DNA of 62,941 bases, filler included, from Hyphochytrium catenoides (GCA_900088475.1; 13 parts of 13 records of this genome joined end to end with filler, not necessarily neighbours in it); one strand, 5' to 3'; shown: positions 53,554 to 56,054, numbered from the whole stretch's first letter. Numbers and translations are program-made. Notes: generated by a model not told the origin, from the sequence alone.

Positions 53554-56054
53554 GCCTTCCTGAACACCTTCTCTTAACTTCTCAGCGATGTACTCCCTTA
53601 CAGAGCCTGACGCGAGAGAGAAAGGAGAGAACGGAAACGACGTAAGAAAACGAGGTAAAGAAAGGAAGCCGAAGCTGAAGTAAGAGAGGGAAACACGGTC
53701 GTTAGGTATACTCCCCAATCGTATGTCATTGGTCAAAGGTAGCACTAAGAAGAGAGAGCAGTAGAGTCGCTCCTTCTTCGTCGTACCCCGAGCTCACTCT
53801 TTCCATACTCTTCTTACCCTATCCCTTGCAATCCTTCTCTCTCTTTCTCTCTTTACCTTCTTCTCCAGCGGCGGCATTCGACTTCTTTTTGACATTGAGC
53901 AATCCTCTATCCTTGGCGTCCTCTAGCTGCTGTTGGAAGGAGTTGTACAGCTCCTCGCTTGCAAGAAGAGTGGGGATCTGTGCGGAAAGATAGGGCGGGA
54001 GGTCAAGGATTTTTTGAACGGGGGGAACAAAATGGTAAAACCCGGCACCCATCCCTCTCTCTCTTTCTTTCCCTCTTTCTCTTCTCTCCTGACACCTTAC
54101 AACCACACACGCCCTCAACCCTCCTCTCTTTCCTGCTCTCACCTTTCAATCAGCTCCTCTCCCTCGCCAGGCTAACTCTTTCATCACACCTTTTTTATTG
54201 GGCGTTCTTTCTTTCCTTTTATCGCATCTTTGCTCTCTCCTTTCCCTGTTTCCTCCTGTACCTTGGCTGTGTAGGCACCAAAGAGCGCCACTAGGCAGGC
54301 GTCTGATATGTCATAGTTATGTACAGAGAGCTTGCCCCCACGAGCCATCTCCCAGTCAGACAGAAACTTCTCTTCTCTCTTTCCACCTGTCTTCCTCCCT
54401 CTTCGTTGTGGATTGTCCTCTCTCTCTTCTGAGTCTTGACTTCCTGCGTTGCCCTCAAGGACTTCTATCAGCGGCGGCTCTAGCTCTCTCGCCCTCAGCT
54501 GCCGGATGACCTCAAAGACTTCCTGCAAGAATGAAAGTTTGAGTGAGACTCTAGCTCTTTGGACGCCCACGTTTCTCTGCTCTTTCTTCCTTCATTTTCA
54601 TCTCTTTGTTCTTTACTGCGAGAGAAGACTAAAATAGAAGACAACGGAGAAGAAGGATAGAGAGAGAAGAACAAGCGAGCAGAGGAGACAGAGAGAGAGA
54701 GAAACAACAGAGACATTGGGAAAAGGTCTAAACCTGACATGTTTGATGAGCGCTCTTGTCTTCCCGGGAATCTGAAAGAACTTTCTGATGGCGATAGGGT
54801 TACATTGGCTGGGTGCCTGCCTGAGAGAGAGAGAGAGAGAGAGAGNNNNNNNNNNNNNNNNNNNNNNNNNNNNNNNNNNNNNNAGAGAGAGAGAGAGAGA
54901 GAGAGACATGAGACGAAGCAGAACCTTGCGAAACAAAAAGACAATTGAGTTGGACAGGAAGACATGGACGAAAGGAGCATCATCATCACTAAAGCGATTG
55001 AGAAAGATCAGTAGCGCGATTGAAAACGAGAAGCGGAGACTAAGAGAATATGGTGGATAAATGGAAATGGAAGAGAATGAGATCCGCCAGTGAGGACGCA
55101 GCAGCAGTGAAGAAAAAATTAAAAAAGTAGAGAGAGGTACAATTAAGGCGGAAGTGGAGCAAGAGAAAAACGGAAGGAGAGAGAGACAGAAAGTGGCGGT
55201 AAGAAGAGAGAGAAGAGGGAGTACGAAGAGAGAGAAAAAGAGAGAAGAGAGAGAGAGAAAGGGGGGAGAAAAGAGAGTGGGAGACAGAGAGCGAACAGGG
55301 AGAGAGAATAGAGAGAAAAATAAGAGAGAGACGAGGAAGAGAGAAAAGGGAGAACAAGAGAGAAAAAGAGGAGAGTTAGATACCTAAATATCTCATGGCA
55401 CTGAAAGGTGACGATTCCGTTCAGTTGCGCCAAAAGAAAGAGAGTCTTGTTGCTAGTCCTTCCTTGTGCGAAGGACGGCATAAATGACTCCACTAGCGGC
55501 TACAGAAGGAGAGAGAAAGAGAGAGAAATAAAGAAGAGAGAGAGGAAGAGGGGAGGATGAAAGAGAAGGACAGAGAGAATGATGAGGAAAGAAGCAAGAG
55601 AAATGCAGGTGATTTATTACATGCGAGAGATAGATAGACAGTAGAGATACAGCAAATTCAGGGCCGAGGAAAGTGCCTGGACCTGGAAGAGCTCAGAGAG
55701 AAGACAGAGACAAAAACGGAAAGCAGAGCCTATCAGAGATAAAGATGAACGATCATATGGAGAAAGAGGAGAGAGACTCATCTCCCTTAACAGCGAAGAC
55801 AAAGAAGAGAGACACAAACCATCACAGATGAGCCCCAAGAAAGCGGAGAAAGTAAGCCAGAGAAGAGTGAGGGAGAAGAGACAGAGGAAACGGTAGAGAG
55901 CAATCTTCGGAAGTAAAGGAAGGGGAAGTGAGGAAAATAGGAAGGGAAGGGAAGGAGAGAAGAGAGAAAATGTGCACACACTTTTACGGTCTTTCCCTGT
56001 GTCTCTTCTCTAATCTTTCTAAGCTGCCTCTGAATGGCGGAACCGACGGAGAGA
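53554..56054 (-). CDS. RuvC-like (RNase H fold) Holliday-junction-resolvase family protein, partial, multi-exon
   Basis: In-frame exons ~55499-55384, 54820-54739, 54522-54262, ~53977-53857 and ~53606-53554 give VESFMPSFAQGRTSNKTLFLLAQLNGIVTFQCHEIFRQAPSQCNPIAIRKFFQIPGKTRALIKHEVFEVI..WEMARGGKLSVHNYDISDACLVALFG. This places a Glu after a beta-strand and a terminal DxxDA helix as in RuvC. The N-terminal catalytic Asp strand is not visible. Confidence 0.65.

What the first reader, a model, noticed from the sequence alone, without database searches (positions are those of the whole stretch)
53554..56054. Intron-containing nuclear gene for a phage-type RuvC-like resolvase
Seen only after splicing: VE-SFMPSF..TLFLLAQLNGIV..P..NP..IRKFF..K..V..W..RGG..YDISDACLVA, followed by a helical C-terminal extension. 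Established: RuvC, Ydc2/Cce1 and poxvirus A22 resolvases use D, E and DxxD acidic residues on an RNase H fold; eukaryotic nuclear-encoded members are best known from fungal mitochondria. Inference: the LAQxNGIV..RK..YDxxDA pattern resembles, from memory, RuvC-like proteins of tailed phages more than Ydc2. This suggests an independently domesticated viral resolvase, plausibly for mitochondrial DNA recombination. Multiple host-style introns exclude contamination.
Basis: partly seen in the sequence, partly recalled or inferred. Interest (0 to 1): 0.72.

Follow-up and report, generated by a model that had tools for sequence, protein, structure and literature searches.

The report
Probable intron-split eukaryotic RuvC-like resolvase fragment
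A 2.5-kb contig carries the middle of a minus-strand, intron-split gene whose exons match, in the right order, the conserved segments of the RuvC Holliday-junction resolvase, but the match is weak, the gene is cut at both ends, and no relatives or RNA evidence could be found.

Summary
They lie in short normal-complexity blocks separated by CT- or GA-rich stretches with GT..AG ends. All joins are phase-consistent. The assembly gap sits inside a (GA)n microsatellite in the intron between exons A and B, so no reading frame crosses it.

Support for RuvC homology is moderate:
- The only family hit for any exon in Pfam, PHROGs and NCBIfam is phrog_159, "RuvC-like Holliday junction resolvase" (E = 0.034–0.071). 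It covers the NYDISDACLVALFGAY motif.
- Five exon pieces, scored separately against five consecutive RuvC segments, fit best in the collinear order (rank 1 of 120).
- Fisher p is 3e-6 for all five pieces and 4e-4 without the C-terminal motif. A reversed-sequence control gives 0.26.

Not shown:
- The N-terminal catalytic Asp lies beyond the contig edge.
- The RNase H fold was not tested, because the joined model was left out by rule.
- Viral origin and mitochondrial targeting are untested.
- No orthologue turned up among 1.84 billion protein representatives or in viral, metagenome or prokaryote contigs.

"Phage-type" rests on about 20 residues that resemble actinobacterial phage and prophage RuvC. 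Verdict: probably a real, divergent eukaryotic RuvC-family gene fragment. Its origin and role are open.

The parts
55988..56053 (-). Candidate upstream exon 'ex0' (..AIQRQLRKIREETQGKT, donor ACC|GTAAAA, phase 0). It may start at the piece edge or at an internal acceptor (ttcag|AGG at about 56029). Proposed to be RuvC helix alpha1.
   Evidence: frames; aligns to the alpha1 segment, IQRQLRKIRE against Iysqlravid, empirical p=0.006.
55500..55987 (-). Intron 0, pyrimidine-rich.
   Evidence: 75% pyrimidine.
55384..55499 (-). Exon A: the strand with the candidate catalytic Glu (LVESF, Glu codon 55488-55490), an aromatic loop (FMPSFAQ) and helix alpha2 (KTLFLLAQLNGIV). Donor AG|GTATCT, phase 2.
   Evidence: SNKTLFLLAQLNGI aligns to the RuvC alpha2 segment, p=0.021.
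54821..55383 (-). Intron A-B, 82-92% pyrimidine, with degenerate GA-rich tandem repeats on the + strand. It contains the assembly gap.
54846..54883 (.). Assembly gap inside a (GA)n/(CT)n microsatellite, 11.5 copies on each side. Intronic, not coding.
54739..54820 (-). Exon B: QAPSQCNPIAIRKFFQIPGKTRALIKH, proposed strand beta5 with the P-x-x-[IV]-[KR]-K motif. Acceptor ctcag|G, donor CAT|GTCAGG (weak).
   Evidence: Merged profile p=0.22. Actinobacterial-type segment p=0.019.
54262..54522 (-). Exon C, 87 codons: helix alpha3 (EVFEVIRQL), an insert of roughly 50 residues that is partly charged and low-complexity, then the catalytic helix NYDISDACLVALFGAY (Asp codons 54310-54312 and 54301-54303).
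   Evidence: phrog_159, E=0.071 and 0.034. (tblastn to a mycobacteriophage RuvC-like resolvase, E=4). (8.7-9.5 bits, empirical p about 1e-4 to 4e-4). (helices at 2-10 and 72-85, low confidence).
53978..54261 (-). Intron C, purine-rich. Alternatively a read-through giving a 27-residue Lys-rich tail that ends at stop 54184-54186.
53857..53977 (-). Exon D (tentative): IPTLLASEELYNSFQQQLEDAKDRGLL.., a helical extension.
   Evidence: (helix 7-23, pLDDT about 95 in that block). No family hit.
53554..53606 (-). Exon E (tentative), in frame with D. Its reading frame is cut off by the piece edge.

Best explanation
The piece holds the central and C-terminal part of an intron-containing eukaryotic nuclear gene on the minus strand. 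The gene encodes a divergent member of the RuvC branch of the RNase H-like nucleases.

By analogy with RuvC, the protein would act as a dimer. It would bind four-way DNA junctions and nick two opposing strands, using a metal-binding tetrad of acidic residues. Two parts of that tetrad are visible here: the Glu of LVESF in exon A, and the two Asp of YDISDA in exon C. The first Asp would sit on exons beyond the 5' edge of the contig.

The most likely role is resolution of recombination or replication intermediates of an organelle genome. That role is inferred and not shown. Whether the gene came from a bacterial endosymbiont, a phage or prophage, or a virus cannot be decided.
For: 1. Gene structure. 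There are five GT..AG introns with mutually consistent phases, and the composition of exons and introns contrasts sharply.

2. Family scans. Across Pfam, PHROGs and NCBIfam, the only hit for any exon is phrog_159, 'RuvC-like Holliday junction resolvase'. The hit is on the DxxD helix, with E=0.071 for the whole exon and 0.034 for the 43-aa piece. E. coli RuvC and two phage resolvases map to the same profile region.

3. Phage tblastn. At chance-level E-values, the hit covering most of the exon C C-terminal query is a mycobacteriophage 'RuvC-like resolvase' (40% identity over 40 aa). Its sequence, NHDIADAAVLALMGAF, lines up with NYDISDACLVALFGAY.

4. Segment test. Five pieces were scored separately against five consecutive segments of a 242-sequence RuvC alignment.
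- Each diagonal p is 0.006, 0.021, 0.22, 0.026 and 0.0004.
- The collinear assignment is the best of 120 permutations.
- Fisher p is 3.4e-6, or 4.2e-4 without the C-terminal motif.
- The reversed control gives 0.26.

5. Spacing. The distances between motifs agree with RuvC to within a few residues.
Against: - No single exon reaches a curated threshold, and Pfam RuvC, Ydc2 and A22 give nothing.
- A plain bacterial RuvC HMM scores every exon below zero bits.
- The local alignment of exon A does not itself include the Glu.
- Exon D gives an off-target match to the Glu-strand segment at p=0.003. This shows how easily short pieces match.
- The actinophage-type profile was seeded through the very motif it then scores, so that test is circular.
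- An exhaustive phmmer of exon C against 1.84 billion representatives found only a spurious repeat protein. Viral, metagenome and prokaryote contig scans found no relative.
- There is no RNA or read evidence.
- The first catalytic Asp and the fold are unseen.
Confidence: 0.6

Rival explanations
1. One reading: a RuvC-like resolvase of tailed-phage type, domesticated independently by a eukaryote and used in mitochondria.
For: The C-terminal helix scores 15.4 bits against the actinobacterial phage/prophage-type segment and does not match the bacterial-type segment at all. The best tblastn and PHROG leads are phage resolvases. Exon B also prefers that subfamily (p=0.019).
Against: The subfamily signal rests on about 20 residues, and the profile was selected through them. 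ex0 prefers the bacterial type. phrog_159 also contains E. coli RuvC. No phage or viral contig encodes a detectable relative. No N-terminus is available, so no presequence can be assessed. No tree was possible.
Confidence: 0.15
2. Chance resemblance. The blocks may or may not be exons of a real gene, but the protein is not a RuvC homologue. The DxxDA helix and the other short motifs arose by chance and were picked out in a very large scan.
For: All family E-values are above 0.03. Bacterial RuvC HMM scores are negative. An off-target p=0.003 occurs among 30 tests. There are no orthologues to show conservation. Pyrimidine-rich sequence gives long open frames for free.
Against: The only family recovered out of more than 80,000 profiles is the one predicted. 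Four further pieces, independent of the DxxD motif, fit their expected segments in order (Fisher p=4e-4, rank 1 of 120, reversed control 0.26). The splice phases are all consistent.
Confidence: 0.2
3. The RuvC-like nuclease domain belongs to a mobile-element protein, such as an IS110-type DEDD transposase or a TnpB/Fanzor-like nuclease, rather than to a junction resolvase.
For: These proteins share the same acidic residues on an RNase H-like fold (established knowledge). The gene is cut at both ends, so extra domains cannot be excluded.
Against: No Pfam hit to those families. No CxxC zinc-finger pair lies between the strand-5 region and the last Asp, as TnpB has (read from the sequence; the TnpB feature is from memory). 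A RuvC-style alpha3 helix (K..V...V..L) separates the P..[IV][RK]K motif from the DxxD helix, whereas in IS110 they are adjacent (from memory). No repeats of the locus were seen.
Confidence: 0.05

Closest known systems
Bacterial and phage RuvC (Pfam PF02075; PHROG phrog_159)
   Same: The order of elements is the same: alpha1, the Glu strand with an aromatic loop, alpha2 (AQ.xG[IV]), P..[IV][KR]K, alpha3, and the D-x-x-D-A helix. phrog_159 is the only profile hit.
   Different: The gene is split by introns. It has an insert of roughly 50 residues, partly charged, before the DxxD helix, about 5 extra residues after the Glu, and a possible C-terminal extension. Similarity is too low for the Pfam threshold on single exons. 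The N-terminal Asp strand was not seen.
Actinobacterial phage/prophage 'RuvC-like resolvase' (e.g. Mycobacterium phage prophi62-3 gp28; P0122-P0241)
   Same: The C-terminal helix N-x-D-I-x-D-A-x-x-x-A-L-x-G-A is nearly identical in pattern. The loops are also alike: E-GPA-Y-G-Q in the phage protein against E-SFMPS-F-A-Q here.
   Different: The other segments do not prefer this subfamily consistently. Those proteins are compact (about 180 aa) and intron-free.
Mitochondrial Ydc2/Cce1 (PF09159), chloroplast MOC1 and poxvirus A22 (PF04848)
   Same: These are nuclear-encoded or viral RuvC-fold junction resolvases with a four-acid tetrad. Their Glu-loop consensus is E(X)2-4[YF](X)1-2[DKRNQS] (PMC7078210), which this gene nearly fits. 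They are the functional precedent for an organellar role.
   Different: No Pfam match to PF09159 or PF04848. The only A22 lead is a rank-20 embedding hit at 0.87. The Glu context here is VESF, as in RuvC, rather than the IE.Q I recall for Ydc2 and A22 (from memory). No MOC1, Ydc2 or A22 sequence was available for direct comparison.

Membership tests
RuvC (PF02075 / phrog_159) | A significant match to the family profile. | tested here: inconclusive
   Tested exon by exon only. Pfam gives no hit. phrog_159 is the sole hit, at E=0.034-0.071. The joined model was not searched, by rule.
RuvC (PF02075 / phrog_159) | Two C-terminal catalytic Asp in a D-x-x-D-A helix (E. coli D138 and D141, from memory). 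| tested here: met
   YDISDA lies at codons 54301-54312. It aligns to the DaADALA column block at 9.4-9.5 bits; only 2 of 20,000 shuffles reached that score.
RuvC (PF02075 / phrog_159) | A catalytic Glu at the end of strand 4, followed by an aromatic loop (E. coli E66 and F69). | tested here: inconclusive
   LVESFMPSFAQ is at the expected place, 13 residues before the aligned alpha2. The local alignments do not extend over the Glu. The loop is one residue too short or one too long for the published E(X)2-4[YF] consensus (PMC7078210).
RuvC (PF02075 / phrog_159) | An N-terminal catalytic Asp on strand 1 (GxD). | not testable with these tools
   It would lie 5' of position 56054, beyond the contig edge.
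RuvC (PF02075 / phrog_159) | Collinear order of the conserved segments. | tested here: met
   The identity assignment ranks 1 of 120. Fisher p is 3.4e-6, or 4.2e-4 without the DxxD piece. The reversed control gives 0.26.
RuvC (PF02075 / phrog_159) | RNase H-like fold and dimer. | not tested
   Only single exons were folded. Exon C had mean pLDDT 53.5, with helices where alpha3 and alpha4 are expected. The joined model was left out.
Ydc2/Cce1 (PF09159) | A match to the Ydc2 catalytic domain profile. | tested here: not met
   No hit at E<=10 for any exon. Short queries make this weak evidence.
Poxvirus A22 (PF04848) | A match to the A22 profile. | tested here: not met
   No Pfam hit. The only lead is an Atlas cluster at rank 20, score 0.87, in which 14% of members carry PF04848.
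MOC1 | Sequence relationship to plant MOC1 and its base-recognition loop. | not tested
   No MOC1 sequence was available through the tools. Only the published loop consensus was compared.

The most novel reading that the evidence does not exclude
An intron-bearing nuclear gene of a protist encodes a RuvC-type junction resolvase of phage/prophage ancestry. The CT-rich introns suggest an alveolate or coccidian-like organism, but that is a guess from memory. The gene has no detectable orthologue in current protein collections and serves recombination-dependent maintenance of an organelle genome. This would be a third, independent eukaryotic solution beside Ydc2/Cce1 and MOC1.
Probability: 0.15. 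Interest if true: 0.7.

Novelty: new member of a known kind. Interest (0 to 1): 0.42.

Why it matters
Organelle genomes need junction resolvases, but dedicated enzymes are known only for fungal mitochondria (Cce1/Ydc2) and green plastids (MOC1). If this is a RuvC-type enzyme in another eukaryotic lineage, it would name a candidate for the missing organellar resolvase there. If the phage-like motif reflects ancestry, it would add a case of viral-gene domestication, alongside the phage-type mitochondrial polymerases and helicase. As it stands it is a fragment with moderate statistical support. It is a lead for whoever holds the full genome and transcriptome, not a result.

Tried and rejected
- **Family scans of single exons.** Pfam, NCBIfam and PDB sequence scans gave nothing.
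- **Word-based protein search of exon C.** No hit.
- **Exhaustive phmmer of exon C against 1.84 billion representatives.** The one hit (P0001) is a VCBS-type repeat protein whose score adds up over 8 repeats. I rejected it as spurious.
- **tblastn against phages.** The whole of exon C gave no match. Exon A gave only chance hits to phosphoesterases.
- **The search for related loci with exon C.** Viral, metagenome and prokaryote genome contigs held no relatives. Exon A was too short for the tool.
- **ESM Atlas.** Nothing reached 0.9.
- **Bacterial RuvC HMM and hhalign.** They placed ex0, exon A and exon C at the correct positions, but the scores were not significant. Exons B and D were misplaced.
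- **Subfamily assignment.** The results were mixed.
- **Rfam.** Nothing.
- **Literature.** I found no paper describing a RuvC-type resolvase in apicomplexans or other protists.
- **TnpB/IS110 reading.** Rejected on architecture.

Full report
**What is there**

The informative strand is the minus strand. Read 5' to 3' on that strand, normal-complexity blocks alternate with CT- or GA-rich low-complexity stretches. One search fixed the coordinates.

| Block | Coordinates | Boundaries and content |
|---|---|---|
| ex0 (candidate) | 56053..55988 | Donor ACC\|GTAAAA |
| Exon A | 55499..55384 | Acceptor tag\|, donor AG\|GTATCT |
| Exon B | 54820..54739 | Acceptor ctcag\|G, donor CAT\|GTCAGG |
| Exon C | 54522..54262 | 87 codons; acceptor ttgcag\|, donor AAG\|GTACAG |
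| Exon D | 53977..53857 | |
| Exon E | 53606..53554 | Runs off the piece |

- Every intron is GT..AG, and the phases agree at every join.
- On the gene strand the exons are 34-52% pyrimidine.
- Introns 0 and A are 75-92% pyrimidine, and intron C is purine-rich.
- The plus strand offers only GA-rich low-complexity frames.
- Rfam finds nothing.

**The gap**

The gap at 54846-54883 is flanked by 11.5 copies of GA on each side. It lies 25 nt upstream of the exon B acceptor, so it sits in a microsatellite inside intron A-B. No frame needs to run across it.

Exon A ends in phase 2 and exon B supplies the third base, whatever the length of the gap. The spacing between the NG[IV] motif of exon A and the [RK]K motif of exon B is 25 residues. 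In a bacterial RuvC displayed it is 23. A hidden exon in the gap is therefore unlikely.

**What could not be checked**

Splicing has no read support.

- The look-up of sequencing runs found three DNA runs of one coded organism. It also found one doubtful RNA run of another organism, holding 6% of the sampled words.
The tool says the filter also trips by chance.
Exon A was used from 55496 downwards.
- Everything below is exon by exon.

**Is it RuvC-like?**

Single exons gave no Pfam, NCBIfam or PDB sequence hits. In PHROGs, exon C gave one hit among 38,880 families: phrog_159, "RuvC-like Holliday junction resolvase". E was 0.071, and 0.034 for the 43-residue C-terminal piece. E. coli RuvC, a Moorella phage resolvase and the Lactococcus phage phiL47 resolvase all map to the same profile.

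A tblastn of the C-terminal 43 residues against 50,697 phage records gave only chance-level E-values. The hit covering most of the query was gp28 of Mycobacterium phage prophi62-3, annotated as a RuvC-like resolvase and itself a PF02075 member. Its NHDIADAAVLALMGAF aligns with NYDISDACLVALFGAY.

An HMM built from 120 homologues of gp28 scores exon C at 8.7 bits, with p=7e-5 for one sequence. That test is partly circular, because the seed was found through the same motif.

**Segment test**

For a test that does not rest on that motif, I merged 242 RuvC sequences. They comprised the bacterial-type set, the actinobacterial phage/prophage-type set, E. coli RuvC and phiL47. I cut the alignment into five consecutive segments: alpha1, strand 4 with alpha2, strand 5, alpha3 and alpha4. 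Each exon piece was scored separately against each segment, with 5,000 shuffles as the null.

| Piece | Expected segment | Empirical p |
|---|---|---|
| ex0 | alpha1 | 0.006 |
| Exon A | strand 4 + alpha2 | 0.021 |
| Exon B | strand 5 | 0.22 |
| Exon C, N-terminal part | alpha3 | 0.026 |
| Exon C, C-terminal part | alpha4 | 0.0004 |

- The collinear assignment is the best of all 120 permutations.
- Fisher's combined p is 3.4e-6 for all five pieces.
- It is 4.2e-4 without the C-terminal piece.
- The same pieces reversed give 0.26.

The alignments fall where a RuvC reader would put them:

- IQRQLRKIRE on Iysqlravid
- SNKTLFLLAQLNGI on Nvasaldragargv
- EVFEVIRQL on qVlamVrrl
- DISDACLVALFGAYT on DaADALAlAlcgAhh

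Cautions apply.

- Exon D matches the Glu-strand segment off-target at p=0.003.
- A plain bacterial RuvC HMM gives all exons negative bit scores.
- The Glu itself is outside the local alignment of exon A.

**Catalytic residues**

- Present: the Glu of LVESF (55488-55490) and the two Asp of YDISDA (54310-54312 and 54301-54303).
- The loop after the Glu (E-SFMPS-F-A-Q) resembles E-GPA-Y-G-Q of the mycobacteriophage enzyme.
- That loop nearly fits the published consensus E(X)2-4[YF](X)1-2[DKRNQS] for RuvC, Ydc2 and MOC1 (PMC7078210).
- Absent from the piece: the first Asp. ex0 already corresponds to helix alpha1, so strands 1-3 must lie beyond position 56054.

**Relatives**

None were found.

- An exhaustive phmmer of exon C against 1.84 billion representatives returned only a repeat protein, which I reject.
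- The word-based search gave nothing.
- Scans of viral, metagenome and prokaryote contigs gave nothing.

With only about 40 conserved residues in the query, orthologues below roughly 60% identity would be missed. This therefore shows only that no close, annotated orthologue exists in those collections.

**Phage-type?**

The C-terminal helix clearly prefers the actinobacterial phage/prophage subfamily: 15.4 bits, against no match to the bacterial segment. Exon B does so weakly (p=0.019). ex0 prefers the bacterial set. phrog_159 contains cellular RuvC as well. The origin is therefore open, and the viral-domestication and mitochondrial claims are untested.

**C-terminal extension**

Exon D folds as a confident single helix, with pLDDT about 95 over residues 11-20. 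However, the exon C frame also reads through 27 Lys-rich codons to a stop at 54184. Whether D and E belong to the protein needs cDNA.

**Verdict**

This is probably (about 0.6) a real, divergent, intron-split RuvC-family gene fragment of a eukaryote. It would be a new member of a known kind. It is of moderate interest because eukaryotic organellar resolvases outside fungi and green plants are unknown. The evidence is statistical and incomplete.

Noticed in passing
window 54823-54845 and 54884-54906: The assembly gap is flanked by exactly 11.5 GA copies on each side. The assembler broke inside a dinucleotide microsatellite, so the true repeat length is unknown.
   Followed up: yes
window 53978-54261 (minus strand): Intron C is purine-rich (31% pyrimidine), unlike the other introns. 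The exon C frame stays open for 27 Lys/Glu-rich codons to a stop at 54184. This is an alternative C-terminus that would make exons D and E untranslated or part of something else.
   Followed up: partly
window 53858-53977 (minus strand): Exon D (LLASEELY..) matches the RuvC Glu-strand segment off-target at p=0.003. Its ..LEDAKDRGLLNVKKK.. stretch loosely recalls a SAP-type helix-loop-helix (from memory). No Pfam hit.
   Followed up: partly
window 55182-55375 and 54636-54713: Degenerate tandem repeats with periods of 23, 47 and 30 lie inside the GA-rich (+ strand) intron sequence.
   Followed up: no
It covers the end of intron 0 and the first two bases of exon A. It was left out of all later searches.
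   Followed up: no
P0001: The only 'significant' hit of the exhaustive search is a 973-aa protein of eight near-identical repeats. Its score sums over the repeats. It is a reminder that the E-value there is not evidence of homology.
   Followed up: yes
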